This document shows positions 1-53,957 of a stretch of 64,000 nucleotides of DNA, one piece after another (positions within the stretch are counted from its first letter, which is position 1; every line of letters begins with the position of its first letter). The notes beneath the pieces are model-generated. The model was not told where the DNA came from and made no database searches. It saw only the letters and a list, made by a program, of their open reading frames with translations. The DNA comes from Heteronotia binoei (lineage: Eukaryota), in the NCBI RefSeq assembly GCF_032191835.1, contig NC_083232.1:62496001-62560000 (forward strand), given 5' to 3'. The translations under genes and the position numbers were made by a program.

Positions 1-181
1 GGTCCTTTGTACTAAACATCTCAAATTAATTATTGTGTGGTCCTGATAAATGAATTGAGGATTAAGTAGAGGAAGAGGCTTGATTTGTAACTGAGTTGCT
101 ATTGTTGTTACCTGTGAGTCTGATTAATCAAAGTGAGGTGATATTTTCTCTCTGCTGACTCTCAGCCTTTGTCTTGGAGAT

Positions 182-283
182 GGCATCCAAACTCATCAGC
201 TGCATGTGGAGAACTGGGAAATCAAACCCAGTTTTCCCAGATTAGATCCCACACACCTAACCACTACACCAAACTTGCTCTCT
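182..283 (-). mobile_element. 5' fragment of MIR/Ther1-derived SINE (Squam3-like)
   Basis: Reverse complement of the SINE head at 49677 (ccactacaccaaact; gggaaatcaaacccagttttcccagat). Confidence 0.65.
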
Positions 284-391
284 AAAGCCTAAGCTGAAGA
301 AGCAGAAGGTGGGAGTTATGAAGAAAGCAAATTTCTTTCCTGATTCCCATTCAAGACCTTGCTGCTGAGCTGATTTCTTCTGGTGTGCTCC

Positions 392-437
<46 letters not shown>
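392..437. repeat. (TAA)n microsatellite forming the 3' tail of the adjacent L2 LINE
   Basis: Pure taa run directly abutting the L2 3' UTR motif (cccgccctcccc...ggctcagggcggctcacaaca). Confidence 0.95.
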
Positions 438-1977
438 CTTTTATTTCTATCCCGCCCTCCCCGCCGGAGCAGGCTCAGGGCGGCTCACAACATAAAATAC
501 ACAGTACATCATTTATACTTATAAAAACATGGTTAAAACAAATTATAGATTAATTAAAATTAACATTAACAGTATGGCGTTATAAACATTAGATCTCAAT
601 GGAATTCAGTAAATAAAAGGCATTTTCAGCAGTATTCCTAGCTTTATCACTAGTTGAAGGCCATCTTGAAGAGGGGAGTCTTACAGGCCCTACGGAATTG
701 ATCTAAGCATCGTAGGGCCCTCACCTCCTCAGGGAGTTGATTCCACAGTAGTGGAGCTGCGGCAGAGAAGGCCCGATCCCAGGTGGCCTTCAGTCTGGCC
801 TCCCTTGGCCCAGGGACATTCAGCTGGTTTTTCCCAGATGACCTCAGTGCTCTCTGGGGCTCATATGGGGAGAGATGGTCCCTCAGGTAGGTAGGTCCTC
901 GGCCATATAGGGCTTTAAAGGTAATAACCAGCACTTTGTAGCGAACTCGGTATGCCACTGGCAGCCAGTGCAGCTCGCGCAGCCCTGGCTGTATGTGCTC
1001 CCACCTTGGGAGCCCCAGCAACAGCCTAGCCGCTGCATTCTGCACCAGCTGCAGCCACCGAGTTCGGCACAAGGGCAGCCCCATGTAGAGGGCGTTGCAG
1101 TAGTCCAGTCTCGAGGTGACCGTAGCATGGATCACCATTGCTAGGTCACGGCGCTCCAGGAAGGGGGCCAACTGCTTCGCCCGTCGAAGATGAAAGAACG
1201 CGGACTTGGCAGCGGCCGCTATCTGTGCCTCCATTGATAATGAAGGCTCCAGAAGAACCCCCAGGCTCTTGACCTTATGTGCCGCTTTCACCGTCAAGGA
1301 CCGGCAAGGGGATTTCCCTTCCCAGGGCACCGCGACCCAAGCAAAGGACCTCTGTCTTCGTTGGATTCAACTTCAGCCCGCTCAGTCTGAGCCAACCTGC
1401 CATGGCTTGCAATGCTAGGTCCAGGCTTTCTGGGACGGAGTCAGGCCGGCCATCCATTAGTAGATAGAGCTGGGTGTCATCAGCATATTGATGGCACCCA
1501 AGCCCAAACCTCCGGGCAATCTGGGCAAGGGGGCGCATGTAGATGTTAAACAACATCGGGGAGAGAACTGCCCCTTGTGGCACCCCACACACTAGTGGGC
1601 GCCTCCGGGACCGCTCTCCCCCAATGGCCACCCTTTGTCCCCGTCCATCGAGGAAGGAGGAAAGCCACTGTAAGGCCAGTCCCCCAATCCCCGCGTCGGC
1701 GAGCCGGCGGGCCAGTAGCTGATGATCGACCGTATCAAATGCGGCCAAGAGATCCAACAATATCAGCACCGCCACGCCGCCTCGGTCCAGATGCCGCTGG
1801 AGGTCATCCACCAAGGCGACCAACACTGTCTCCGTCCCATAACCCGGACGAAAGCCGGACTGGTGAGGGTCTAAAGCGGAAGTGTCATCCAAAAAACTCT
1901 GCAACTGTGATGCCACTGCCCTCTCTATAACCTTACCTAAAAATGGTAGGTTCGAGACCGGTCGATAATTTGCCAAT
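392..1977 (-). mobile_element. 5'-truncated L2-clade LINE (RT domain, C-terminus, 3' UTR), frameshifted
   Basis: ORFs 1275..2228 and 650..1330 give NYRPVSNLPFLGKVIE, GVPQGAVLSP, YADDTQLY and TSRLDYCNALY...LQLVQNAAARLL...LHWLPV, typical of L2 ORF2. There is a frame break near 1290-1330, then the 3' UTR and (TAA)n tail. Confidence 0.9.
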
Positions 1978-4900
1978 TTGATAAAATCACTTTCTTGGGA
2001 GGATGGATAATGGCCCCCAGACCATATCTTTTTAGTGTGAATTTTAGTTAGAGGCAACAAATTAACAGAGAACCTTCCCATGTTACCCCCTCTGCCTGGC
2101 CTCTGAGTTTGGTGACATGTGAGGGGGGCTGAGTAGCAGCCCTCCAAAGCAGGTGCCCCCAGGAAAGTGCCCTCTGGAGAAATCACAGCTACAGGTTCAA
2201 AGGAGAATGGTGAATGTCCCCCCTGCAAGTTAGAGGCATTAAGCTTGCCCTCTGCTTAACTGCTGCATGTGAGCTGGGGGTCTGTATCCCTGTTGCTTTG
2301 ACAATTAATTGATCAGTGCCTGTGTGTCTGCCTCATAAACTGCTGACACAAACTGTACAAACCTCTGTTAAAAACATGGTTGTTCATGGGAGGTGCGTGA
2401 GAGATGTGATTGTATGAACCTTGGCTCACAAACCACGAACTGGGTGATTTTTATAATGAACCTAAGTTTGTGACAAGGTTCATGCCCATCCCGAGTTATG
2501 AGTATAATATAAATTATGGCAGCTGTTTCAGGTGCTCATTTGGGAGAAATAAATATATGAAGAGTGTGTGTGTGTGTGAGTGTGTTGAATAAATCTTGGA
2601 GCTTTTACTGCTATATTGATGTCTTTCGTCTTCAGATCAGTCGTGATTCCAGAACTCCAGGCTCCACCTTGAATTTGGTGACTCTAATCATGCAGAACAG
2701 AGCCAGCAATCTTTGGTCTGGACAAAACAATATGTCATCATACAGTCTCCCATTCCTATTTCTACATAAATGAGCTACCTGTGTGCCTTTGCAAGCTAGC
2801 TTAACAAACGGCTGTATGGAACAAAATACTTATGCAATGAAATAGCTACTTGGATAGGAAGTAATGTTCTGGGGCAACCAAAAGCACTAATTTCAACATA
2901 CAAGACCACTAGGAATGACTTTTAGTGGTACTGCCTGCTTAGCTTCCAACTACTGAGTTTCTTTTGCAACAGAAACTTTTCCATTAGGCATTGGTCTCTG
3001 AAAGCAGTTTTTCGCATACCTGCCTGTCAAAAACATTTAGCCATAAAATAAAAATAAAAAAGGAAAGAGTTCAACAGAGTGTACAGTATCTTTAATTCAA
3101 CATCTCTTTTGCCACCTCTCATTCACTCCCTAAATAATTATTTTTAAAAGCTATAATAATGTAAGGTCACTTGCTTGAGCTTTTTCAGTGGAAACAGAAG
3201 GCAAGCCTTTTCCTTGGCATTCAGAGGTCTCTCATTCACCTTTTAAATGTATTTTGACAGTTTGCCAGGTGGGTTGCCCTTCACCTCAATGCAGTATATC
3301 ACCTGCCTTTTGTTGTAATAAAAACAGACAATGTGCTGCAGTATAAATCCAAAGGAAATATTTCAAATAGTCCCTAATTTGGAATTACTTTGCTTAGAAG
3401 GAACCTGAATATAGAACTGTATTGATCTGCTAGCTGAAGTGGTTCTTTGTATAATACACAGTATTGCTAAAACTGGTATGTTTGAGCAAAGGCCAATCAA
3501 TAATTTGGAAGGATGCTTCTTAATAACAATTAATTGACTGATGATACTATAGAGGTCAATTTTTTTTTTTTAAAAAGTATTATCTAACAGATTTGATGTC
3601 AAATATTACATTTCCAGGCTACAAACTGAAAAGACAAGTCTTAAGGAAACCCATCTGGAGCATACAGACTGAAACTGGAATTTTGCTGCTTCTTGATATA
3701 ATATCATAGCATATTTATTAAGGTCAGGATTCAAAGAGAAATTAAACAAATTATCTGGAGCGCAAGAAACATCCTGCCGCTGCCTTGAGAACAAATCTTT
3801 AGGCTACATGACAAATGGCTTTTGAAACTGAGAGGAGTTCGTGAGATGATGTGTGTCAGGCTGTTTATTAAGAAAAGTCCAGAACTATGCCGAGTGATTT
3901 GAATTTCCTTGCCAAACCTGACTTACTTAAAGTTCCCTGCAGAAGCCCAAACTGCTCTATGAACGTTGGCCCACAGGAGCAAGCCAGATGATTGAGGAGA
4001 ACCAGCTTAGTAAAAGCACAAACTATCTCACCCTGTTATACAAATGATCACATGCCCCACAGACATACAGCCCCAGGTTCAGACATTGGCACCCAAGTGG
4101 ACAGGAAGTGAAAATTATAAAACAAGTGATATGCTAAGAAAGGACGCCAGAGATGTATGAGCTATTGTATTAACACTCCTTGAGCAGCGTGAATGTACTG
4201 CTAATGGCGGTCAATTACTATGCAAATACCCTGTAATTGTGCTTGTTAAAAGCTGAGCATAGTATGCTGACATTTTAAAAAAAGAAGAAATGAAAAATGA
4301 CTAGTACATGATGCAGGTTAATTGTTAAGAAAGAATATCAGAATTCTCTTGTCCTTTACAGTCCTCATAATGATGCAAACAGAAAAGAACAAATTTACAT
4401 CTTTAAAACTAGCATGCAAAAAGTCTTGGATTTCTATAATTATGCTTTTGCTGTCTAAGATTAATCAGGCAAGTTAATGATGCAAAAAATTACATTTATA
4501 ATCCAGTCTACATACAGCTGTACTGCAAGCTAAAAACTAAGTGCTATTAACATAAATGGAATTAATGGGCTGTCCCTGGCAATCTTCATATCTATCACTT
4601 ACTAATTAATATTATTCTGTAAAAAATAATTGGAGGTGAGAAAAACATACAAAAGCAACAAGACTAAACTTGCATCAGACATCGCTGGACCTGCAAATGA
4701 TAGGAAAGGGTTTGCTGGGCTTCTACTTCATAAGAAATTGCCAAGTAGCACTGAAATCAGCAAAAATCTTTTATGCAAGTAATTCATTATGGCAGCCAAG
4801 TTATTATCTCCCTCAAGAATGAACTTTTGTGAGAAATGTCAACTTCAGCTAATAACTGAAGGACTGAGTAAGAGAAGCTATAAAATGTGATAGTTAAATT

Positions 4901-5004
4901 ACAAGAGAAAAATGGATGCCGTGTGTTATCTTTTTAGACAGTTCAACATATTTATGATCAAATTCCTTGTATATATTATAAACGTTCCTACCAATGAATA
5001 GATT

Positions 5005-5150
5005 AGGGGAGGATGGGCTATGGATAAGTGGCAGAACATCTGCTTTGCATACAGAAGGTCCTGAACTCAATCCTGGAATCACTAGTTAAAAGAATCCCAG
5101 AGAACCTGCAGTGGCGCTGCTAGTCAGAACAGACAATATCAACTTTGGCT
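5005..5150 (+). mobile_element. Degenerate tRNA-derived SINE (Squam2-like)
   Basis: Similar to the 35066 copy (agaacatctgctttgcatacagaaggtcc...gctgctagtcagaacagacaat). Confidence 0.55.
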
Positions 5151-6998
5151 GACTTGGTCCCTGGTGCACCTGGGCACAATAGGTTCCCAACATGGTGTCT
5201 GACTACTGTAAAAGGAACAAATACTAGGGATGCCAGTATCCAGGTGATTTCACGGGTTATAGCCTGCTGTCATATTGCAGATGGGCAGCAGGGGAGGCCC
5301 TGCCCCCAAGTATGACCATGAGGTTGATACTCCCTTCATCCCCTGCTGCAAGGAAAAAAGAAAAGAGCAGGTGCTGCGCTTGCCTGCCCTGCAAGCAGCA
5401 AAGTGCTGGGCAGGTGCATGCGGTGACACTCTTGCAAAGTGGGGGCCACTGGCTCCTGCCCTGTAAGAGCTTGCAAGAGTTTGCCTCTTGTAGGTCAGGT
5501 CAGGTACACATGGCACTTGGTCTTTCCAAGTGGGGGCCACCAACTTTTGCCCTGCAGGGCTGGCACACATGGCCCTCACCTTTTTTCCAACCATTTAAAG
5601 TACAGGCTCTCTTTAAACTGTTGGGAAAAAGCTGGGGGGGGGGTGTACGCTGTGTCCAGGACATAATGATGCCACTCTGTATGACATCATCACATTGGGG
5701 ATGACATCCCCCTCCTGGAATACCCCCCAAATCCCCCTGCTAGGGAGAAGATTGGACTTTCCTTCCTTCCTTTGGTATTATATACACTTTTAATTGCGTC
5801 TCAAATATTTTCTTTTTTGTTTTGAAGGCATGAAACATTTGTTTTGATACTAAGAGAGAATTAGTTGATTTCTCACATTTCTCCAACAGAGCAAGGAAAG
5901 CCACTGATATTCAAACAGATCTTGATCTCAGTTCTTGGATTCTCACTTCAGCTCTGTTTTTCTGGAGCTAATCCTTCTGAACCATCCTGCCCTTCAGCAT
6001 ATGCCGGAGGAGCACCTCAATCTCACTGGCTGTTCTGATGCACTTGATCCAGCTGTGTTTATGTTTCCAATTAACATTTGATGGTTGGTATTCATTTCCC
6101 AGGGCTTTGTTGTGGATCTGCTGATGACTCCATGGTAGCTCTTGTCCTGGAAATCTCTGGCAGGCATCTGCAGGGTCTAGTGAGATTTGGGTGGCAGGAA
6201 GCTGTTCCCCTGTCACAGGAACAGTGGAAGTGATCCCACGGTGGAAGAGCATGAAGGTGGCCCCTTGTTTCATCTGTAGGAGAAATCTTGAGATACTGCC
6301 TCCCCCAGGTCCCATCAGGGTTCCGACCATTGCTTCTCCCACCTTCAAGCAAAGATGGTGCTCAAAACCCAAAGGGTTTCCTTCTCCTGTCAGGCTGTGT
6401 ATACATACACACACACACACACTTAAAAAACAACCTTAAAAACATAGAAAGAAAAAAAACAAAAAAACCCATAGAAAAGGATTGAGGTGATGCTTCAGGC
6501 TATAATGCTAACTCCTGTTCAAGTCAGTGCTATGTATTAACTTTTAGGCAGGCAGGCAAGTTTGAAATTATGCTAGTGTCTACTTACACTTATTTAACCT
6601 TTAGAATAAAAATGTATCACTCTTCAATAATGACATCATCCTTAATCATATATAGATAGAGTTGGTCATACCTGAAAATGTGGTTTTTTTAAGTGGCCAT
6701 ACCTATCTCCCATAAACATATTCAACACTGCCCTACAGACTCTGCAGTACTGTCTTGAGTTATACTGTATATCCAGAGAAATTTGAATCAACAGCCCTAT
6801 GTTCTCAGAGTTACAATTTTGAATTGCAATCCAAATCACACTGAAAAAGTCTCTTGTGATTTCCTCAGAGAGGCATGGGGATCAAATACCCACCCAAGCA
6901 ACTAAATGCGCACAAAATAGCTTGCATGTATGTTAAGAAACCCACCAATTTTTGTCAAAGTGTTCCTATAAACAGAACCACCTGTTGTTGCTATAAGC

Positions 6999-7117
6999 CA
7001 GGGGTAGCCAACGGTAGCTCTCCAGATGTTTTTTGCCTACAACTCCCATCATGCTGGCTGGGGCTGATGGGAGTTGTAGACAAAAAAAATCTGGAGAGCT
7101 ACAGTTGGCCACCCCTG
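6999..7117. mobile_element. Palindromic hAT MITE (119 bp)
   Basis: TIRs caggggtagccaac / gttggccacccctg; perfect 8-bp TSD ctataagc (6991-6998, 7118-7125); internal fold-back symmetry. Confidence 0.92.
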
Positions 7118-7268
7118 CTATAAGCTGTTTCCATGTTTAGCAGAATACATACTAGAATAGGCACCATACAGTAGTGCCTTGAAGGTAGCAATTCTAGATT
7201 CAATACCTAGTACTTCCAGTTAAGAGGACTTCTGTCTGAAACCATGGAAAGACACTGCCAGAGTAGAT

Positions 7269-7362
7269 CCAGGTGGGTAGAAGTATTCTTGCATATGAAA
7301 GCTCATACCTTGAATAAAACTTTGTTGGTCTTAAAGGTGCTGCTGGACTCTAACATTATTCT
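7269..7362. mobile_element. Short Penelope-like retroelement terminal fragment inserted in a SINE remnant
   Basis: gaaagctcataccttgaataaaactttgttggtcttaaaggtgc motif, also at ~31770 and 42690-42740; 15-bp TSD actgccagagtagat (7254-7268, 7363-7377). The Penelope assignment is recalled from similar reptile pseudo-LTR motifs. Confidence 0.6.
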
Positions 7363-8074
7363 ACTGCCAGAGTAGATAATTTTAGGCTAGATAAATTAAT
7401 TTCCTGTTTTGCAATGCAATCCTCTACAAATTCTGATTCAGGTGATTTCCACTGATTTCCATAAGATTATATTGGAATATCTCTGGATTACACTGTTGGT
7501 AAGGGATGTTCATAGAGTCAGATCCTATTTAAAAAAAATCCTCTCATGCAATTCCCCCTCCTGGTTGCAACCTTCCAACTTTCTCCTTCTGTTGATCCCA
7601 GAGATTCCTCATCCCCCAGGAGTAGTATTTCAGGTGTTATTTTGTACTGGGGGAGGGAGGCAGGGAAGTCATGTTTTCATGCATGGCATTTAGAGGGGAT
7701 TCAACCCATACAGTGGAGAAGACAGTGATGATTTCAAGGCTATTTGTGGCTTTATTAAACAGTAACATAATAAAGCATCGCTAGGTTAGATTACTGCAAT
7801 ACAGTCTGTGTGGAGTTGCCCTTGAACAAAAACTTCAACTGGCATAGAAAACTGCAGCCAGGATGTTGACTGGAGTTGGCTATAGGGACCGTATCACACA
7901 AGTCTTGGCCTATCTGCACTGGCTCCCAGTATGTTTCCAGGCTCAATTCAGGTGTTGGTGTTGACCTCTAAAACCCTACATGGCTCAGAACCAGACCTTG
8001 CTTTGGATGCCCCTGACTGCTGGGGTTAGGTGGATGGCAACCCAAAAGATGGCCTTCTCAGTCATGGCACCAAA

Positions 8075-8714
8075 CAGGGTTGCCAAGTCCAATTCAAGAA
8101 ATATCTGGGGACTTCGGGGGTGGAGCCAGGAGACATTGGGGTGGAGCCAGGAACAAGGGTGTGACAAGCATAATTGAACTCCAAGGGAGTTCTGGCCATC
8201 ACACTTAAAGGGACAGCACACCTTTTAAAATGTCTTCCTTCCATAGGAAATAATGAAGGATAGGGGCACCTTCTTTTGGGGCTCATAGAATTGGACCCCC
8301 TGGTCCAATCATTTTGAAACTTGGGGGTTACTTTGGGGAGAGGCACTAGATACTACACTGAAAATTTGGTACCTCTACCTCAAAAAACAACTCCCCCGGA
8401 GCCCCCGAAACCTCCAGATCAATTCCCCATTATACCCTATGAGAATCAATCTCCACATGGGGAATAATGAAGTGCTCAGCAGATGTTTCCCTCCCCCCCC
8501 AGTTTCTGGCAATTCTGAAGCGAGGGACTGGCCTCTTTACTCACGAGTTGCTACCAACTTCTTCAAGGTAACACAGATACACCATCCCAAGAGGAAGCCT
8601 TTCAATCGGAGACTGAAGCCTCCGGAGGTAGAAACGCACATGGTCCTCTGGGGGCGGGAAGCAGCCTGGGAAAGCAGAAGAACCCGCGCTGGGACCTGGG
8701 GATTGGCAAGCCTA
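8075..8714. mobile_element. Non-autonomous hAT element, TAGGGTTGCCAA-type TIR (640 bp)
   Basis: cagggttgccaa / ttggcaagccta termini; perfect 8-bp TSD gcaccaaa (8067-8074, 8715-8722); near-identical to 41908-42563. Confidence 0.92.
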
Positions 8715-10887
8715 GCACCAAAACACTGAAACTCTACCCCCAGAGACACTGGCTTCTTTTGTTGTCTTCCACCAGTGGGTGAAGGGTTTTTTTTCACCAT
8801 CTTGTGTTCCTTGAGTTCTTCTTCCTTCTTTGTTTTTAATTGCTGTTTTTTTGTTTGAGCTATACATTTTTGTTTGATTTTAATGGTTTTTAATAATTTG
8901 TTGTGTATTTTAAAAATCTGTTAGCTGGCTTGGTGGCTCTGATGAGGGTGGTAAGGCAGGCTATAAAATTGGTAAATAATAAATAGACTATGGTTTATTA
9001 TGCATTTATCCTAGTCTGTCTTGTAGTAGAGGGCAATTATGCTTTAATATAACTGTTCATTATTTTCATCATTTCATGTTTGTACACTGAAACAAATATT
9101 CTTTCTTTCTTTATATTATATCCTACCTTTCTCACTGAGACTCAAAGCAGATATGATATAAACAATATGATCAGACAACTTGAGATAGTCACTAAATGTA
9201 ATAGGACTAGGAATACAAAAATTGAAAAAACAGTGCAAAAGATAGACGTATCAGATGTGATATATCATGAACAGTGCAGAAACTGGAATTTAAAAGGTAG
9301 AAGATAATTCAGTAAAGAGGAGAATAAACATATAGTGAACACTGGAGTAGACAACAGTAATGTTCCTTTTATAGAGAAGTGTCCTCTGGAAGCATTCCAT
9401 TATACTATAGCCCTATTCCCTTTATTTAAAAAGACCTCCTGAACAATTGTGTATTAATTAAAAGATCACAGCTCTAGTTGGTTTATTTGTTTTGAAACGT
9501 TTATTTTCTTTTTGGCTATATTATTAAGTGTGTTGGTTGTATGTAGGAGTGTGCATTCAGATCTATCCAAGCCAAAAATATTTTGGCTTCCCAAATGTAT
9601 CTGGGTTTTCTCAGGAAAACTGAAAAAAAAAACCCTCAAGAAAATATTGGATATATTTGGGGTAGATCTGAAAAAAGCAGAGAGGCAGTTCTCTCAGCTG
9701 TTTGTCAGGCAGGTTTATGGGCTGATTACAGACAAGCACTTTGGGTCGACTCAGAGATGCCTCAGAAGTTGACCCAAAAAATCCGTACAGACGGCAACAT
9801 CTGCTGGCTGTCCTCCTCCCATCCTCACCCAGCTCTCCAAGTTCCTGAGACCGGCTCAAAAAGCTACCACTTTCAAAGTATCATTCAAAGTGGTAACAAA
9901 TCTTTGAGCTGGCCGTCAGTCGCCTCCTCGCTGTTTGGATGGGGAAGGGAGCAAGTGAGGTGACTTGGCGGTGTGGACCTTCAATAAAGCATTCAGAGCA
10001 CTGGAGCACTTGTGTGCATAAGCGCTTACCCCCCGAGGGGAAAAAAAAGCAATCTGTCTTCTGGGTCACCTTCCCATGCGGAGGTGCCCAGCCGCCTCAC
10101 AGACGGAATGCGGGCCGCATGCGGGTGAGCGTGTGAAGGCTCCGGGATGGCTCTTTTTGACACATCTCAACATCTCTTTTTCCAAACATCTCAACAAGAT
10201 GGCAGTGGTCTGCAGTATGAATATTGCATTAAGAGCAGAAAAAAGGAATGGCCCTTCTCAGTGAATCCAAGCATCATCAAGCTATAGAAAGTGTTATCCA
10301 AATGTTTCCAAAAGGTTCTACCTCTGGTTTTGTAGCAGTAGCAGCAGTTGTTTCAACTGTGTGTCATGTCTCTTAGTGCTCATTCGGACCCTCTTGCACA
10401 GTGCAAACTTTTCCAAACTGGGTTTCTGCCAAGTTAATTGAAGCACGCAACAAGCATATGTTCTGCTCAAGTAACTGTGTGAAGTTCAAAGTATCATATC
10501 TAAACAGTCTGTAATCTTCCATGCCTTCAAGGCACCATAGTCCTGGAAATGACTCCTTAATTTCAAGCCAACATAAAACTTTAATTTATTGAAAAGTGCT
10601 GCTGCTTTTTGATGGGAAGGCAATTTCAATGCACTCACTGGAGAATTATGTCAAGGCTTAATTAAAAGCAGCAATTCACATATGAACTTCATCCATCCCT
10701 ACTTAAATTTGTCCTGAGTTTCAGATACAAAGATGAGAAGAATGGCTACATTGGATTTATATTGAAAAGGTGTCTTTTAGCACTGAGATTTTACTTGCAA
10801 GGAAGCTTGGCTGGATAACTGTCCAGCCTATCCTCCACTCTCACTTCTCTGCTATCGTTAGAGGCCTCCACCTTGGGTAGTAAGTAC

Positions 10888-11085
10888 CATGACTTTTTTG
10901 TACAAAAAGCCCAGTAGGAACTCATTTGCATATTAAATCACACCCCCTGACATCACCATTGTTCCACACAGGACATTTTTGTAGGAAAAGCCCAGCATGA
11001 ACTCATTTCCATATTAGGCCATACCCCTGGACACCAGGCCAGCTGGAATTGAGTTCCTGAGCATTTCTGCTAAAAAAAGCGCCTT
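10888..11085. mobile_element. hAT MITE, CAGGGCTTTTTT-TIR family, with internal tandem module
   Basis: Degenerate TIRs; TSD gtaagtac/ggaagtac (7/8); aggaactcatttgcatatt module. Confidence 0.75.
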
Positions 11086-12391
11086 GGAAGTACTCTATGA
11101 ATTCACATATTTGGGGAATTTATTATTGTATTTAGGGAATGTGTAAACTATAAACTTTAAGTGTGAGTTGAGGTCAAAGAGACTGGAAGAAAGAAAAAGG
11201 GTGACTATAAGCAAATGTAAATAAATGTACTCAAGATTCATAGCCCTTGGGGATGAGAACTAAAGGTTTAAGCCAAAGGAAGAAACAAGTTCTGAGAAAG
11301 GAATATACGATTAACCAGAAGATGTTAGGATTAGGGGATTTTCTTGGACCCTGGGCACCAAAGTGAACAATGAATGAGGGCAAAATTAAGTCCATGCTTC
11401 TGTCTCCACCTCTGAGAAATGTGGTGCCACTGTAGTACTGCCACTGCCCAAGGGAAGTATAAAAGAGTTCAGGAGAAAGGTGGATTAGGAAGCCTTTTTT
11501 TTTTTTTTAGCAGCCCTTTCTGTTTAGGGTCTACCTGCTTTGAGGATGGTGTGTCTTAAGGCTTCTGAAAACCTCTCATCAACCTGCCCTCTCTTTCTCC
11601 AAATTCTCAGGAGACTGAGGGTTGAGAACCCCACAAACCTATAAGGATACTGTCTCTTCAACCTTCCTGGATCTTTGGATCGATAACAACACATCAATTT
11701 CTTGCTAGGAAACTGAGGTAAAATTAGAAAAGCAGGTTGACGTTTAATGGTTTAATGTTTAAATTTAGATCGGCTGACATACATTAAGCTTGCTCTCATG
11801 CTTGCAACCTTTTCTTTCATGTACATTTACAATGCCTAGTAGCTTATGGTTCATGGCTCCACTACCTAACATGTCCTCTACTGGGGACTGGTTTAGAACC
11901 ACACTACAGACCAGTGGCGTAGCTAGGGCTTTGGGGGCCCGGGGCCCAAGATTTATGTGGGCCCCCCTATGTGTGTGCACGCCACCAGAAACAGGATATG
12001 ATGTCACTTCCGGTGATGTCACTTCCGCAGGATGGCCACCACTTGCGAAGGGCCTCCAAACCGGGGGATCTCCTGCCCCCACCTGGGGATTGGCAACCCT
12101 ATTTGGAAGACCCCACTGAAGCCCCCCCCTTTCCCAAACCCTCCAAAATCTCCCGACCTGGGCCAGTGGGGCGAACTGAGCTAGCCGGCCACTAGTTGAC
12201 CCTGGGCACTGGCATGGCCACGCGAGGCCGGCTAAACGAGGGCATCGCTATGAACAAATAACGGGGGGGACAGCGGGATGCAGCCAGCCCCGCTGCCGCT
12301 TCACTGCACCCAACTCTCACGCCGCCCGGCTCGGCGGAGCCGCTGATCTTGCGATATGCCGCAATATTCTCGGCCCGACTGGCTGGCTGAC

Positions 12392-12466
12392 CTTGCCGGA
12401 GGTGCCGTCGCCCAAAACCACGAACTTGAGCTGCCGGTCGGAGCACTCCTCCTCAGAGTCCGACAT
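12392..12466 (-). pseudogene. RAB28: Captured copy of RAB28 coding exon 1 ([25 protein letters not shown]) with intact GT donor; not the resident RAB28 gene
   Basis: Closely matches the recalled human RAB28 N-terminus ([25 protein letters not shown]). It is 75 nt followed by AAG|GTCAGC, lies inside a TIR/TSD-bounded element, and no RAB28 exon 2 was seen in 1-11900. Confidence 0.85.
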
Positions 12467-12750
12467 CGCCCGGCGGCCAGAAGGAGTCCCGCGCTCATTC
12501 ACTCCTCCTCACGGCGGCAACGGAAACAAAGTCGCCGCCGCCATCTTGCTTCCCCTTCGACCGCTCGCTATGGCAGCCGCTGGACGAGACCATGAGGCAG
12601 AACGGGGGGGGGGGAGACAGAAAAGGAAGGTGCCCAAGCCGACTCGGGGAGGGGGGAGCTGTACTGAGCGGACCAGGAACGGGCGGTGTAGCCGGTGAAA
12701 GAGTGAAATAGCGCAGCGGAGAAAAAGCGGGAATGAGATTCGGCTCCTTC
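12467..12750 (-). promoter_or_regulatory. Captured RAB28 5' UTR and CpG-island core promoter
   Basis: CpG-dense; canonical YY1 site AAGATGGCGGC on the minus strand at 12537-12547; GC-box-like runs upstream. Confidence 0.65.
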
Positions 12751-13247
12751 GGGACCCCCCTTGGCAATGCGGGGGCCCCCCAGACCCCCCAGACCTGGGG
12801 CGACCCGCCCCCCCCGCCCCCTCCCTACGCCACTGCTACAGATTCATGTTTTATTTGTTTATGCTTCTGCACTTCTTGTTTATGTATCTCATAGTTTTCC
12901 TTTCAGCTCCAGAAGCTTTACAAAATGGTATGACTGAGAGATAACAAAAAAAAGAGGGTAATACACTGGAGGAAAATATACAATGGAACAAGGAAGAATG
13001 AAATTGGCAGCCTGTCACTAAAGTACTGTAACGGTCAATCTCCAAGACGTAATTCCTAATCAAAATGGTTCTCAATACTGGAAAAATTAGAAGATACCCT
13101 TGAAAAAAAGGGTATTCATAACGGGACCAATACTACAATTTTTTTTGAAAACCAGCTGGTTAATCTAATTATAGATATTTAATTTAAAAGTTATGTTTAA
13201 GCATGTAACAGATATGTTACCTTTATATAGACTAAGACTGTGTTAAC

Positions 13248-13426
13248 CAGGGCTTTTTTGTAGCAGGAATTCCTTTGTATATTATGCCATGCCCTCCTGA
13301 TGTGCCAATTTTCCTGGAGCTTACAGTAGGCCCTGTACTAAGAGGCATGTAAGCTCTTGGAGGATTGGCTACATCAGGGGTGTGTGGCCTAATATGCAAA
13401 GGAGTTCCTGTTACAAAAAAGCCCTG
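13248..13426. mobile_element. hAT MITE, CAGGGCTTTTTT-TIR family (179 bp)
   Basis: cagggctttttt / aaaaaagccctg; TSD gtgttaac/gtattaac (7/8). Confidence 0.9.
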
Positions 13427-14756
13427 GTATTAACTAAGAATAAAATTATGGTGCTGTAACATTCTATTGATGGTGAGTTGTTGTATTTGAAGTTTAAGAA
13501 AAATAAAAATGTTATACAAAAAAAGATAATCATATTTACCCCAAGTCATATCAATTAATAATAGTTTATCCTCCACAATTTTCACCCACATAGATTTAAA
13601 AGGCTGTTGTGAGTCAGCCAGGGCTCAGTAATAGTGAGGGCTCTTCAGGAGGAGCCCCATATACCCAAACTTGAGTTAACAGAAGCTGACCAGCAGGAAA
13701 ATGAACTACAGGCTTGTCAGGATTGCTTCTGAACAGCTGGCTGGAAGCATGACCCTTAGGCATGGGGCTATAAAAACCAGCCAAGAGAGGCTGTTAGGCA
13801 TGGACACAAGTTCATGCTAACAGTAATATTCTCCTCCAATACCACATTTTGAACAAATCAGCTTTCTTCATCCCCATACATAACAATGGGGGAAACTATG
13901 GCATGAATTATCTTGATCTTGGTTATTAGAGACACATCCTTATACTTAAGAACCATTTATAGCTCCTTCATGGGCAGGCTTCCCAGTCTCAATCTCCTGA
14001 TTTCTTGGTTGCAGTTTTCCTATTGGTTGATGACTGAGCCAAGGAATAAAAAATCTTGAACAATTTCAATTTCCTCATTGTCATCCTTAAAGCTGTATAG
14101 TCATGCCTTTTGTCTCCTTAACAGTCAGCTGTAATCCTGCTTTGACACTTTCTGCTTTAATGCTCAGCAGTAGTCATTTTATATCTTCATTATGTTCTGC
14201 CAGAATGTTACATATCTCAAATTCTTAATGTTCCTTCCACTGATTTTCACTGTACCTTTTTAAAAAACTAAACCAGCTTTCCTTATGATTTGTTCTTCAT
14301 ACAGATCTGAATAGATAAGGAGAATAGATAAAATACATCCTTATCTGTCACCTTTGCCAGATGAAAACCATTCTGTTTCTCTATATTCTGTCCTAACAGG
14401 AACACCTTGTCCAGAGCTCAGGTTGCACATCAAAACAATCAGATTTATGACACACCTATTTCATCACAGGATTTTTGAGGTAAGAGAGTATTAAGAGTCA
14501 TTTACCATGCCTTTTCCTGTGCATCTAACTAGACTTAGCTGAAGTGGCACCACTGTTGTCTATAGAAGATCCTCTACCACAGTCACTTTCTACTACTGGT
14601 GTTGCCCAGCAACAACCTTTTAAGTATTCCTCCACTCCCATCACCAGTGGAACTGTCCATTCTCTTCTGCTGATGTGGCTGTTAATGCATCTTAGTCTGG
14701 TGTCTCAGCAGTGACCATTTTGCCTTCAGAGACTCTGCTATGAGTTTAGCCTCTGG

Positions 14757-21075: not shown

Positions 21076-21459
21076 TAGGGTTGCCAGTCCCTAGGTGGGG
21101 GTGAGGGTTCTCCTGATTTCATGTGCTCTTGCCTGCCACTGGCCAGCTAGCCAATGGGGGGGAACCCCACCCCCAAGAGCAACCACTGGTGGCCACCCCT
21201 CTCCCTCCCTCCTGTGAAATTTAAATAGCCCTTCAGCTGACTGGCAGGAACATGTGGCCTGCTGATTTAAAGGAGAGCTGTTTACATTTTGCAAGAGGAA
21301 GGGATAGGGGATGCATGCCTAAATTTCAGATGTGAAATGGCTGCTTGGAGTTCAGGCGTGTGGGGTGCTGGTCCCTAACATGATGACAGCACTTCTGCCC
21401 CCTCCGGGAATGGCACCCAAAGTCCCCCACCAGGGAGGAATCAGAACCTGGCAATCCTA
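21076..21459. mobile_element. hAT MITE, TAGGGTTGCCA-type TIR (older copy)
   Basis: tagggttgccag / ctggcaatccta; TSD largely degraded. Confidence 0.7.
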
Positions 21460-43706: not shown

Positions 43707-44408
43707 CAAGGTTGCTTCTTTCAGTAAAGGAAGAGGCCATAGGTGAATAGAATGGCATACAGTCTATCCTCCAGAGCAGTTCTTTTCTCCAGGATGAGTA
43801 AAAGAGGTCTGTTGTCTGGAGTTCAATTTTGATTCCAGGAAATCTTCAGGCTCTACATGGAAATTGGCTACTCTAGGCCTGGAAGCACCCTCCGGGTGAC
43901 TTGATGCCACCTGGCAGGCATGACTTAACTAGGCCTAGATGCTTGCTCTTGTTCAGCAGCAGCCCCACTATGACAGGCAACTCCAAGTTGGGAAACTCTG
44001 GGAGATTTGAGGGGTGGAGTCTGGAGAGTGTGGGGTTTGAAGAGGAGAGGAACCTCAGACAGGTACAATGCCATAGACACCACCCTCCAAACCAGCCATT
44101 TCCTCCTGGGGAACCACTGTTGCCAATCTCCAGGTGAGGGCTGGAGATCACTCAGAATTACAACTGCTCTCCAGATGACAGACATCAGCTCACCTGGATG
44201 TGGGGGGACCATCTCCATACGGTACAATGGAGAATTTCACTTGCCAAGTTGTGCTGCCATAAAAACATGACTCGGCAAGTGAATTGGGCATTGGTAGCCA
44301 AATCAGATTGTCCAAACTGTATTTGGCTAAGAAATTCCAGGAAATTACTGATAAGATATTTTGGGGGATATTTCTTCACCTTGATATAGACCAAGGCACA
44401 CTCTAGAC

Positions 44409-45804
44409 CCATGATGGCGAACCTATGACACGCGTGTCACTGGTGACACGCGAGGCAATTTGGCTGACACACTGGAAACCAAGGAGCGTGGCGAGCCGCG
44501 AGTCATTCGGAGGCTGCTGAGCTCGTCTCGGAGGAGCAGCAGCTGCTAAGGTGAAGGCGAGAAGAGGCGGCAGCAGCACAGCGGGCCGCCGCCGCCTCTT
44601 TCCCCGGCTCCAGGCCGGGGGTGGGGGTGGGAGGGAAGGTTGGCCGACGCTGCCAGCGCCTCGCCTTGACCTGGGGGTGGGAGGAGACAGCCTCCTGGCG
44701 CAACCGGTCCCCCACCCAAAGCAGAGGCAGCCAAACGCGCCTCCTCCTCCTCGCAACAGGGCCGAGCTTTGCAACCCCCTTTTCCCGCCCTCCCCGGGGC
44801 CTGAGGAAATAGGTGGGTATAGCAAGAAAGAAAAAAAGAGCATTGCAAAAAAAGAGGCAGGGGGGGAAAGAAATGCCCTCCTCGGCGGGTCGTGCCTTTG
44901 CAATGCCGGGGCTTTGCAAATGCAGGAGCAAGGCAGGCGTGTTTTTTTCCGTTTGTTTGCACGGAGCGGCTGGGGGAGGGGGAGGCAGAGATGGCATTGC
45001 AGCAGTGTGTGGGGGGTGCAATGCCCGAGGGGACGTCGCTCTTGGGCCTGTTGTGGGGCTGCCCCCCTCCTCCTCCACCCAGTCCTGTTTTTTTTTTTTT
45101 TTGCAACCAACATGATCTTTCTCACTTTGCTCTCTCGCTCTTTCTCATGGCCGCCTGCCAGAGGCGGGGTTTCAGATTTAAAGGACAAGCTGCCCTTTTC
45201 AGCTTGGAAGAGGAGGAAGGGGGTGGGCGATGGGGGCTGTGTGTGGGTTGCAAAAGAGCAAGGGGAGGGGAGCATTGGGTCGCCCCCCTTGGCTTCCCTT
45301 GGCAAGCGCTGGAGGAGAAAAGGTGGGAAGAAAAAAAGATACACCCTTTCCCGCAGGGTTACCAATCCCCAGGTGGGGGCAGGGGATCCCCCTCTCCCCA
45401 AAATACCCCCCCAAGTTTCAAACGATTGGACCAGGGGGCCCAATTCTATGAGCCCCAAAAGAAGGTGCCCCTATCCTTCATTATTTCCTATGGAAGAAAG
45501 GCATTTTAAAAGGTGTGCTGTCCCTTTAAATGTGATGGCCAGAACTCCCTTGGAGTTCAATTATGCTTGTCACACCCTTGTTCCTAGCTCCACCTCAATG
45601 TCTCCTGGCTCCACCCCCAAAGTCTCCTGGCTCCGCCCCCAAAGCCCCCAGATATTTCTTGAATTGGACTTGGCAACCCTCTTTCTTTATTGGGGCTGCA
45701 AATATCATCAAATTATTGATATGGTGAAGTGACACGCGACCCGAAGAAGACTAGACTTTTTCCCGATTTTCGACACACCAAGCTGAAAAGGTTAGCCATC
45801 ACTG
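44409..45804. mobile_element. Non-autonomous hAT (Charlie/hAT1-like) element, 1.4 kb, with CpG-rich interior
   Basis: TIRs ccatgatggcgaacct vs reverse-complement cagtgatggctaacct (13/16); perfect TSD ctctagac (44401-44408, 45805-45812); subterminal tgacacgcg repeats. Confidence 0.9.
45354..45681. mobile_element. Internally deleted TAGGGTTGCCAA-family hAT element nested inside 44409-45804
   Basis: cagggttaccaa / ttggcaaccct; body is the reverse complement of 8075-8330; TSD only partial. Confidence 0.85.
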
Positions 45805-48577: not shown

Positions 48578-49134
48578 CAGGGGCGTAGCTAGGGCTTCGG
48601 GGGCCTGGGGCGCAAGATTTATGTGGGCCCCCCTATGTGTGTGGCGGAGGGGAGGGGCTTCCCTGCCTTAAGACGCTGAGCGGCGCGCGGCCCTCCCCAC
48701 ATCCCTTCGCCCCCGCAGCCTGCCTCACGCACGCCCGAAGTTCCTCTTTCTGGCGCACCGCCGCGGCCAGGAGCGGCTGAGTCGTCGGCGCCTGGGAGTT
48801 GAGGGGGCCGGAGAGCTCCGGGGTGCTGCTGCCGAGCGTGGGGATGCGGCCACTGGGTGTGCAATGCCACCGCCTCCTCCTCCTCCTGCTGCCCGCCGCC
48901 GCCTGCTGCTTCCTGCTGCTGCCCGCGGCACGTGGAGCAGCAGGAGAAGCCTCGAGCAGGCGAGGGTCGGACGCCGCTTCCCCCGCCCCGAGCTGGGACT
49001 GTGGCCGGAAGGTCTGCGCGATGCTCCGGAGCCCTGCCGGGGAGGGGAGGGACCCCCCTTGGCAATGCGTGGGCCCCCCAGATCCCCCAGACCTGGGGCG
49101 ATCCGCCCCCCCGCCCCCCCTCCCTACGCCACTG
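48578..49134. mobile_element. Pack-hAT element 2 (557 bp) with GC-rich first-exon-like cargo
   Basis: Same termini as 11912-12835 (left 62/66 identical; right ~85 bp highly similar); perfect TSD gctatagt (48570-48577, 49135-49142). Confidence 0.92.
48844..49011 (+). pseudogene. Putative captured first exon encoding a signal-peptide-like N-terminus (MRPLGVQCHRLLLLLLPAAACCFLLLPAARGAAGE...WDCGRK); donor gene unidentified
   Basis: gggATGc start; basic n-region, Leu-rich h-region and small-residue c-region; possible donor AAG|GTCTGC; CpG-rich upstream. Donor gene not recognised. Confidence 0.45.
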
Positions 49135-49220: not shown

Positions 49221-49355
49221 NNNNNNNNNNNNNNNNNNNNNNNNNNNNNNNNNNNNNNNNNNNNNNNNNNNNNNNNNNNNNNNNNNNNNNNNNNNNNNNN
49301 NNNNNNNNNNNNNNNNNNNNNNNNNNNNNNNNNNNNNNNNNNNNNNNNNNNNNNN
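49221..49355. other. Assembly gap (135 N)
   Basis: Run of n. Confidence 1.
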
Positions 49356-53178: not shown

Positions 53179-53321
53179 TGCATTGAAGTTGGGGAAGAGA
53201 TTTACAGCTGCCGCAGTATCCAGAGGAAATGGAAGAAAAGGTTTGATATCCAGCGATGGCTGCAAAGCTGGGGCTGGAGGACGTACCAGGGCTGGAAGAG
53301 CAGGACTCTGGCATGTACCTC
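53179..53321 (-). CDS. ZNF385D: Internal coding exon of zinc finger protein 385D (GGTCQSPALPALVRPPAPALQPSLDIKPFLPFPLDTAAAVNLFPNFNA)
   Basis: Near-identical to the recalled human ZNF385D N-terminal segment; pyrimidine tract plus ttcatatAG acceptor; GCA|GTAAGT donor; 143 nt, entering in phase 1 and leaving in phase 0. Confidence 0.93.
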
Positions 53322-53957
53322 CTATATGAAAAAAAGAAGTAACAACTGAAATCACACAGAACAAATTTTGAATCTGTATTAGTTCTTATTTTTAAAAAGT
53401 CTCTTATCTGCACTGGTCAGATACCAGATAATTAAGGTAGGATGCTTCTCAGCTGCTAGTCTTAAACTCATAATAGGCTGGCAGGGTCCCCTGCCCCTCA
53501 CACATAGACACCAGAATCTTCAGCTACTGTTATTTTAGTGGTACTCAAACCATGGGTCATACCTCCATATGGAGATATTAGATGCTTTAAGAATAGCCAA
53601 GAACTACTCTTTGATAACCTTCCCACACTTGTTGTATGATGCTTGGACTAGGACAAGGAATATGGCCTGTGCTGAAGTATAATCAGTCCAGCAATGAACG
53701 TAACAATGAGATTCTTGAGAACCTCTGCTGGGTGGACTTCTGAAATAAAGCAATGAAGTAGTTCCCCAGTTCTTCCCTGGATGTCTTCTTGCTTGGCTTT
53801 TTAAAATAATGTAGCAGAATTTCATTGCATTTCTTCTATCCCCAATTTCAGAATAAGATAGATGCAGTCTATACATGATTTATGGACTACTAACACACAT
53901 ACACACACACACACACATGCAAATTGGAATCCTAAGAGAGAAAAACAGTGTAGTGGA

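What the first reader, a model, noticed from the sequence alone, without database searches (positions are those of the whole stretch)
11978..12750. RAB28 promoter, exon 1 and splice donor transduplicated into a ZNF385D intron
Seen: an intact 25-codon exon (12466-12392), a GT donor, ~290 bp of intron-like sequence, a 5' UTR and a canonical YY1 site (12537-12547), all inside TIRs and a TSD. No RAB28 exon 2 ([21 protein letters not shown]...) was found in 1-11900. Known (recalled): human RAB28 lies at 4p15 near NKX3-2/BOD1L1, not at ZNF385D (3p24). The retained intron and promoter sequence points to DNA-level capture rather than retroposition.
Basis: partly seen in the sequence, partly recalled or inferred. 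Interest (0 to 1): 0.85.

Follow-up and report, generated by a model that had tools for sequence, protein, structure and literature searches.

The report
hAT transposon carrying RAB28 promoter and exon 1
A small cut-and-paste (hAT-type) transposon in a gecko-like genome picked up about 700 bp of the RAB28 gene (core promoter, first exon, splice donor, start of intron 1) and carried it to two other chromosomes. This is a clean but ordinary example of a known kind of gene-fragment capture, with no sign so far that the copy is active.

Summary
Window 11912-12836 is a 925-bp non-autonomous hAT-type transposon with 11-bp perfect terminal inverted repeats and an 8-bp target duplication (7 of 8 bases match). 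Its ends (138 bp left, 84 bp right) belong to a family with thousands of copies.

Its interior, 12050-12752, is copied from the resident RAB28 gene on contig C9. The copy holds about 286 bp upstream of the ATG, an intact 25-codon exon 1, the GT donor and 342 bp of intron 1.

C9 has no transposon ends. It holds the genome's only match to RAB28 exon 2, 18.4 kb downstream, and a later exon. A second full copy on C21 has identical capture junctions and a perfect, different 8-bp duplication. This means one capture followed by transposition.

The copies differ by 2.1% from each other and about 4% from the parent. Nine of 13 copy-specific changes are CpG transitions, and none of the unpolarised differences is a CpG loss on the parent's side. 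This suggests the copies are methylated and silent.

The available public RNA runs are from other lineages and show only parental alleles, so expression is untested. The host exon at 53179-53322 matches ZNF385D only from my recall.

This is a multicopy Pack-TIR (Pack-hAT), a kind already described in animals. The scan has already noted several similar captures elsewhere in this genome.

The parts
11904..11911 (.). Left target-site duplication CTACAGAC
   Evidence: It matches the right flank CTACAGAT at 7 of 8 bases. It fits the family's target preference nTnnnnAC.
11912..12049 (+). Left end of the hAT-type element. It holds the 11-bp TIR at 11912-11922 and two direct subterminal repeats TGATGTCACTTCCG at 11999-12027.
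   Evidence: It is 97-98% identical to the ends of at least 38 other scored copies, out of 2652 candidates. The repeats are (D4). It is identical in the C21 sibling, 138 of 138 bases.
12050..12391 (-). Captured start of RAB28 intron 1 (342 bp). It begins with the GT donor at 12391-12390. Its far end (12050-12102) is a fragment of an abundant SINE-like repeat that is also present in the parental intron.
   Evidence: It is colinear with C9. The repeat nature of 12050-12102 follows, the last showing very high depth and loose ends that continue as the repeat.
12392..12466 (-). Captured RAB28 exon 1 coding part: 25 codons, ending in phase 0, encoding most of the P-loop (GDGTSGK).
   Evidence: RNA contigs of related organisms stop aligning exactly at 12392, so the donor is used in the parental gene (table 8, records 2 and 9).
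12467..12752 (-). Captured 5' UTR and core promoter (286 bp upstream of the ATG, CpG-island-like). It contains the YY1-type motif at 12537-12547.
   Evidence: One search shows it colinear with C9. One search gives cargo GC 64% and CpG observed/expected 0.80. A 1146-nt mRNA contig of a related organism has at least 107 nt of 5' UTR, which places the mRNA start at or above about 12573 (record 9; inferred).
12753..12836 (+). Right end of the hAT-type element, with the TIR at 12826-12836.
   Evidence: It aligns with the right ends of seven other family members. It is 94% identical to 49051-49134 in this window.
12837..12844 (.). Right target-site duplication CTACAGAT
53179..53322 (-). Host-gene coding exon of ZNF385 type, with an AG acceptor and a GTAAGT donor, ending in phase 0. 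The element lies about 40 kb downstream of it in the following intron, on the same strand.
   Evidence: tblastn of a recalled ZNF385D N-terminal peptide gave 84% identity over 55 aa, E 5e-27. The splice sites were read. Whether the paralogue is D was not checked against a database.

Best explanation
The element is a multicopy Pack-hAT, meaning a non-autonomous hAT transposon whose interior was replaced by host DNA.

1. Capture (inferred). During repair or replication of a family member, DNA synthesis switched template into the 5' CpG island of RAB28 on C9, at 2-bp microhomologies. It copied 703 bp, running from a SINE fragment in intron 1 through exon 1 to 286 bp upstream of the ATG, and then switched back.
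2. Mobilisation (shown). The chimera kept both termini. A hAT transposase supplied in trans moved it at least once, leaving copies on C10 (this window) and C21.
3. Present state (inferred). The window copy sits in sense orientation in an intron of a ZNF385-type gene. It carries a complete-looking core promoter, first exon and donor, but it encodes only 25 residues of RAB28 and cannot make a GTPase. Its pattern of decay suggests that it is methylated and silent.
For: Transposon identity:
- The terminal sequences match thousands of copies.
- Where both ends were found, the 8-bp TSDs match at all 8 positions in 6 of 9 family elements and at 7 of 8 in two more, one of them the window's; the ninth, L030, shows no match.
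- The target preference is nTnnnnAC.

Parent locus:
- The cargo 12050-12752 matches only C9 and C21.
- C9 lacks transposon ends and has RAB28 exon 2, unique in the genome, plus a later exon, colinear on the same strand.

Single capture, then transposition:
- Both junctions are identical in the C10 and C21 copies, but the flanks and TSDs differ.
- Junction microhomology is GA on the left and GG on the right.
- K2P distance is 0.021 between the copies and 0.039-0.042 to the parent.

Mobilisability and transposase supply:
- A 557-bp sister subfamily shares only the first 66 bp and last 84 bp of the termini and has at least 40 full copies. Termini that short therefore suffice for mobilisation.
- Many hAT transposase frames of about 940 aa are open in this genome.

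Probable silencing:
- Nine of 13 copy-specific substitutions are CpG transitions (P about 1e-8 under uniform mutation).
- Of the 19 differences that could not be polarised, none is a CpG loss on the parent's side and four are CpG losses on the copies' side.
Against: - No read data from this genome were available, so neither the junctions nor transcription were checked independently of the assembly.
- A 2-bp microhomology is close to what chance gives.
- The autonomous partner of this family was not identified. The long family members examined have no transposase ORF.
- The window's TSD has one mismatch.
- Silence is inferred from CpG decay only.
Confidence: 0.88

Rival explanations
1. The captured promoter is active. 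It gives the host gene an alternative first exon, with RAB28 codons 1-25 spliced in frame to the next ZNF385-type exon, or it produces a non-coding or antisense-regulating transcript.
For: The ATG, the 25 codons and the GT donor are intact in both copies. The cargo is still CpG-island-like. It lies on the same strand as the host exon, and both exons end in phase 0. Tan et al. 2021 (PMC8277862) report that a share of Pack-TIRs are transcribed as chimeras.
Against: All 5 window-specific substitutions are CpG transitions, as expected for methylated DNA. All RNA reads and contigs over the exon carry parental alleles, although they come from other lineages. A 75-nt exon at about 2% divergence stays intact by chance.
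Confidence: 0.07
2. Composite (macro-)transposition. Two separate hAT copies once flanked the RAB28 5' region on C9, and their outer ends moved everything between them.
For: The family is very abundant, so two nearby insertions are conceivable.
Against: C9 shows no transposon sequence at either boundary. The element has a single truncated left end and a single truncated right end joined to cargo at microhomologies, not two complete elements.
Confidence: 0.04
3. Assembly artefact, or a resident RAB28 gene misread as a copy.
For: No independent reads span the junctions.
Against: Two copies sit in different unique contexts, each with its own TSD. Exon 2 exists only on C9. There is no exon 2 in the window.
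Confidence: 0.02

Closest known systems
Multicopy Pack-TIR / Pack-hAT of animals (Tan et al. 2021, Nat Commun, PMC8277862), for example Pack-hAT-N8_XT carrying the CAPSL 5' UTR in Xenopus tropicalis
   Same: It is a non-autonomous hAT with both termini and 8-bp TSDs. The internal host fragment comes from a distant, interchromosomal parent. The junctions show short microhomology. Several copies have distinct TSDs. The cargo comes from a gene's 5' end.
   Different: The cargo is 703 bp, against a median of 224 bp in that survey. It includes core promoter, whole first coding exon, donor and intron start together. The host is a squamate, and the words 'anole', 'reptil' and 'lizard' do not occur in that paper's main text. 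There are only two copies.
Pack-MULEs of rice and other plant Pack-TYPE elements
   Same: Gene fragments are transduplicated between TIRs. From my own knowledge, Pack-MULEs tend to carry GC-rich 5' gene parts.
   Different: The superfamily differs: Mutator with 9-10-bp TSDs there, hAT with 8-bp TSDs here. The host here is an animal. This element carries a single-gene cargo.
Processed pseudogene / retrocopy
   Same: It is a partial extra copy of a gene on another chromosome.
   Different: This copy retains promoter and intron DNA, has no poly(A) tail, and is bounded by TIRs and an 8-bp TSD. Retroposition is excluded.

Membership tests
hAT superfamily (non-autonomous member) | 8-bp target-site duplication | tested here: met
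   The window element matches at 7 of 8 and the C21 sibling at 8 of 8. L013, L043, L044, L046 and L047 match at 8 of 8, L042 at 7 of 8, and L030 shows no match.
hAT superfamily (non-autonomous member) | Short TIRs starting CAG / ending CTG, and the target consensus nTnnnnAn | tested here: met
   The TIR CAGTGGCGTAG is a perfect 11 bp. Across 29 insertion sites, position 2 is T in 14, position 7 is A in 19 and position 8 is C in 17.
hAT superfamily (non-autonomous member) | An autonomous relative with the same termini that encodes a hAT transposase | tested here: inconclusive
   The genome has at least 150 Dimer_Tnp_hAT hits, many in open frames of about 940 aa. Family members of 4.0, 4.8 and 5.65 kb have no transposase ORF.
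Pack-TIR (Tan et al. 2021) | Transposon termini on both sides of an internal non-transposon segment | tested here: met
   The left 138 bp and right 84 bp match the family. The interior matches only two other loci.
Pack-TIR (Tan et al. 2021) | A parental copy elsewhere in the genome without the transposon ends | tested here: met
   C9:5387125-5387802 has no transposon ends and has RAB28 exon 2 and a later exon downstream.
Pack-TIR, multicopy class | Two or more copies with the same capture junctions but different TSDs | tested here: met
   The C10 and C21 copies share both junctions. Their TSDs are CTACAGAC/T and CCTTGAAC.
Pack-TIR, transcribed or chimeric subset | Copy-specific transcription or splicing to the host gene | not testable with these tools
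   No RNA or DNA run of this genome was served. The runs that were laid carry parental alleles only and give no depth on the unique flanks.
RAB28 (identity of the cargo) | Exon 1 and the adjoining exon of the parent match RAB28 better than other Rabs | tested here: met
   The exon 1 peptide's best PDB hit is RAB28 residues 5-19, a weak hit (E 0.12) because the peptide is short. The parental exon 2 hits RAB28 residues 20-51 at E 9e-13, with the next Rab at 4e-5.
Processed retrocopy | Intronless, with a poly(A) tail and no promoter | tested here: not met
   342 bp of intron 1 and 286 bp of upstream DNA are retained and are colinear with the parent.

The most novel reading that the evidence does not exclude
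This element may be one instance of a lineage-specific habit: gecko hAT families repeatedly capturing and spreading CpG-island promoters with first exons and splice donors. That would be an animal counterpart of the 5'-biased Pack-MULEs of rice. It would seed introns with spare promoters and first exons, of which this in-frame, sense-oriented copy in a ZNF385-type intron could be one that is used.

In support, earlier notes of this scan list similar captures in the same genome (CHCHD3, CEP164, LONRF1, an SLC22A31-like gene and a carbonic-anhydrase-like gene). One amplified subfamily seen here (the L013 type) also carries an ATG...GTGAGT first-exon-like segment in CpG-rich DNA.
Probability: 0.3. 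Interest if true: 0.7.

Novelty: new member of a known kind. Interest (0 to 1): 0.35.

Why it matters
It is a fully documented vertebrate case in which a DNA transposon moved a ready-made promoter, first exon and splice donor into another gene's intron and was then mobilised again. The parent, both junctions and a sibling copy are all identified. Multicopy Pack-TIRs are rare in the published animal survey: four cases, 1.4%. The case is therefore useful material for studying how such captures arise and whether they create alternative first exons. On its own it changes no concept. Its value would rise if the genome-wide bias toward gene 5' ends is confirmed.

Tried and rejected
- Retrocopy: rejected, because intron and promoter DNA are retained.
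- Resident RAB28 gene: rejected. Exon 2 is unique to C9 and absent from the window.
- Plain segmental duplication: rejected, because the homology with C9 stops exactly at the transposon ends in two independent copies.
- Reads: the two run searches returned only small-share runs of other organisms. Laying four runs gave no depth on the unique flanks and only parental alleles over exon 1. Junction support and expression therefore remain untested, which is no evidence against either.
- Autonomous partner: Pfam scans of ORFs in family members of 4.0, 4.8 and 5.65 kb found no transposase.
- Host gene name: a zinc-finger regex over the six frames found no ZNF exon. The ESM Atlas gave no usable hit for the host exon. 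The name ZNF385D rests on a recalled peptide.
- The 'second cargo' at 48644-49050 is the interior of an abundant 557-bp subfamily, not a private capture.
- tRNA and Rfam scans of 10800-13900 found nothing above threshold.

Full report
**What is in the window.** Reading 11700-13000 shows a GC-rich block between two inverted termini, CAGTGGCGTAG at 11912-11922 and CTACGCCACTG at 12826-12836. The block is flanked by the 8-mers CTACAGAC and CTACAGAT. On the minus strand an ATG at 12466 opens 25 codons ([25 protein letters not shown]) that end at 12392 and are followed by GT. The motif GCCGCCATCTT sits at 12537-12547.

**Which part is transposon and which is cargo.** A search of the whole 2.63-Gb assembly with 11905-12845 and a local BLAST separate three components.
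- Positions 11912-12049/12051 match at least 38 other scored places at 96-99% identity, out of 2652 first-look candidates. This is the left end of an abundant repeat.
- Positions 12753-12836 align with the right ends of other family members.
- The interior, 12047-12752, matches only two other places. One is C21:29300791-29301712, at 96% and including both transposon ends. The other is C9:5387125-5387802, at 90% by BLAST with gaps counted, and without any transposon end.

The captured piece therefore starts at about 12050, not 11978. The stretch 11978-12049 holds the family's subterminal direct repeats, TGATGTCACTTCCG twice.

**The family is of hAT type.** Both ends could be located in nine elements.
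- Six have perfect 8-bp duplications: the C21 sibling, L013, L043, L044, L046 and L047.
- Two match at 7 of 8: the window element and L042.
- One shows no match: L030.

The 29 insertion sites sampled show the target preference nTnnnnAC, which from general knowledge is the preference of hobo, Hermes and Ac relatives. Family members of 4.0, 4.8 and 5.65 kb contain no transposase ORF. The genome does hold at least 150 hAT dimerisation-domain hits, many inside open frames of about 940 aa, so transposase is plausibly available in trans.

**The parent is the resident RAB28 gene on C9.**
- The exon 1 peptide occurs exactly three times in the genome, on C10, C21 and C9.
This lies 18.4 kb downstream of the C9 exon 1 on the same strand.
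- The DNA there has an AG acceptor and a GT donor. Its translation matches human RAB28 residues 20-51 at E 9e-13, with the next-best Rab at 4e-5.
- The exon 1 peptide's best solved-structure hit is RAB28 residues 5-19. This hit is weak (E 0.12) because the peptide is short.
- A further RAB28 exon lies at about C9:5356730-5356819(-).
- The window contains no exon 2.

**One capture, then transposition.** In the three-way alignment the C10 and C21 copies share both transposon-cargo junctions to the base. They lie in unrelated flanks and each has its own TSD; the C21 copy's is CCTTGAAC, perfect.
- At the left junction the family reads ...CACTTGCGA|GGGAGCC, C9 reads ...GGGGGGA|AGGGCCTCC, and the chimera reads ...CACTTGCGA|AGGGCCTCC. 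This is 2 bp of microhomology, GA.
- At the right junction C9 reads ...CTTCGG|AGAG, the family reads ...GAGG|GACCCCCC, and the chimera reads ...CTTCGG|GACCCCCC. This is 2 bp, GG.

Two base pairs is the median reported for animal Pack-TIRs (PMC8277862), but it is also close to what chance gives. The left breakpoint lies inside a SINE-like repeat that sits in RAB28 intron 1. A 557-bp sister subfamily in this same window (48578-49134) shares only the first 66 bp and last 84 bp of the termini, yet has at least 40 full-length copies. The RAB28 element's retained termini are therefore long enough to be mobilised.

**Age and state of the copies.** Over the cargo, the K2P distance is 0.021 between the two copies (14 transitions, no transversions) and 0.039-0.042 to C9. 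The rest of the 10% BLAST difference is indels. The left transposon ends of the two copies are identical at 138 of 138 bases.

With C9 as reference, all 5 window-specific and 4 of the 8 sibling-specific substitutions are CpG transitions. The probability of this under uniform mutation is about 1e-8. Of the 19 differences shared by both copies against C9, four are CpG losses on the copy side and none is a CpG loss on the parent side. From the established link between cytosine methylation and CpG-to-TpG decay, I infer that the copies have been methylated in the germline while the parental CpG island has stayed protected.

The cargo is still CpG-island-like, with GC 64% and observed/expected CpG 0.80. 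All three copies keep the ATG, the 25 codons and the donor. At this divergence, intactness of 75 nt carries no evidence of selection. A neutral rate of the order of 1e-9 per site per year (my recollection, not tested) would put the transposition within roughly 10 Myr and the capture within roughly 20 Myr. Both figures are inflated by CpG hypermutability.

**RNA and read evidence.** Only small-share runs were offered. I laid four runs on 10900-13900.
- The unique intronic flanks had no depth, so the assembly's junctions could not be confirmed.
- Over exon 1, every read and contig carries 12442G and 12487C, the C9 alleles. Some carry further differences, so they are RAB28 transcripts of related lineages and not of this copy.
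- They are still informative in two ways. Contigs in two runs stop aligning exactly at 12392, which confirms that the donor is used in the parental gene. A 1146-nt contig carries at least 107 nt of 5' UTR, which puts the mRNA start at or above about 12573. The cargo therefore includes the whole known 5' UTR plus at most about 180 bp of upstream promoter.
- Expression of the copy remains untested.

**Host context.** A peptide I recalled for the N-terminal part of human ZNF385D matches 53179-53343(-) at 84% over 55 residues, E 5e-27. The exon has an AG acceptor and a GTAAGT donor and ends in phase 0. No later exon of that gene was found in 1-53178. The element therefore lies about 40 kb into the following intron, on the same strand, and its own exon also ends in phase 0. 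An in-frame RAB28(1-25)-host chimera is thus structurally possible, as a sister note of this scan proposes, but nothing here shows that it exists. The paralogue name (D) was not verified with a database, and the Atlas search gave no usable hit.

**Comparison with what is known.** Tan et al. 2021 (PMC8277862) defined Pack-TIRs in 100 animal genomes.
- They found 370 cases, 208 of them in hAT elements.
- The median cargo was 224 bp, and microhomology was present at most junctions.
- Only four cases (1.4%) were multicopy, all far from their parents. One was a hAT carrying the CAPSL 5' UTR onto three frog chromosomes.

The present element meets every structural criterion of that multicopy class. 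It differs in degree only: a larger cargo that unites core promoter, first exon, donor and intron start, in a squamate host. It is a new member of a known kind.

Earlier notes of this scan report several similar hAT captures of promoters and first exons in the same genome and name the species as Bynoe's gecko. I did not verify the species name. Whether there is a true bias toward gene 5' ends is the open and more interesting question, and I could not test it here.

**Verdict.** The element is most likely a silent by-product of hAT activity.

Noticed in passing
window 48578-49134: A second member of the same hAT family, 557 bp long, with 66 bp of the left end and 84 bp of the right end. Its whole sequence recurs in at least 40 full-length copies at 91-95% identity, out of 1688 candidates.
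   Followed up: partly
L013:768-1640(-) = G000:C12:32060728-32061613: An 873-bp subfamily of the same hAT with a perfect TSD (CATCTTTT) and at least 13 full-length copies at 91-95%. Its CpG-rich interior contains a first-exon-like ATG ORF (MITSMNVALQDLGSN) followed by GTGAGT. One genomic match, C6:135549382-135550034, covers only the interior (query 170-803, 94%) and could be its parent. If so, this would be an amplified Pack-hAT. The C6 DNA could not be fetched.
   Followed up: partly
L046:334-933(+) = within G000:C4:131570335-131574350: A 4016-bp family member with a perfect TSD (GATCTAAG) carries a 199-aa ORF with a weak DDHD-domain match (E 9.5e-5, below Pfam's cut-off). L017, L021, L022 and L026 share the start of the same interior, up to the beginning of this ORF. 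It may be another captured gene fragment.
   Followed up: no
G000 genome-wide (one search list): At least 150 hAT dimerisation-domain hits were scored out of 2623 candidates. Dozens lie in uninterrupted frames of about 940 aa, which suggests that hAT transposases are intact and recently active in this genome.
   Followed up: no
window 12050-12102, also 45355-45392, 44119-44149 and 21076-21101: A fragment of a very abundant SINE-like repeat, with very high summed depth in RNA and other contig sets of several organisms. The left capture breakpoint in RAB28 intron 1 lies inside it.
   Followed up: partly
window 13324-13424 and 10900-11000: Short stretches with very high depth in all RNA runs laid, and with many strand-switch joints between them. 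They are probably inverted copies of another abundant repeat. The only Rfam hits are weak mir-28/mir-879-like matches at 13305-13368, below the gathering score.
   Followed up: partly
window 49221-49355: A run of 135 N directly right of the second hAT element.
   Followed up: no
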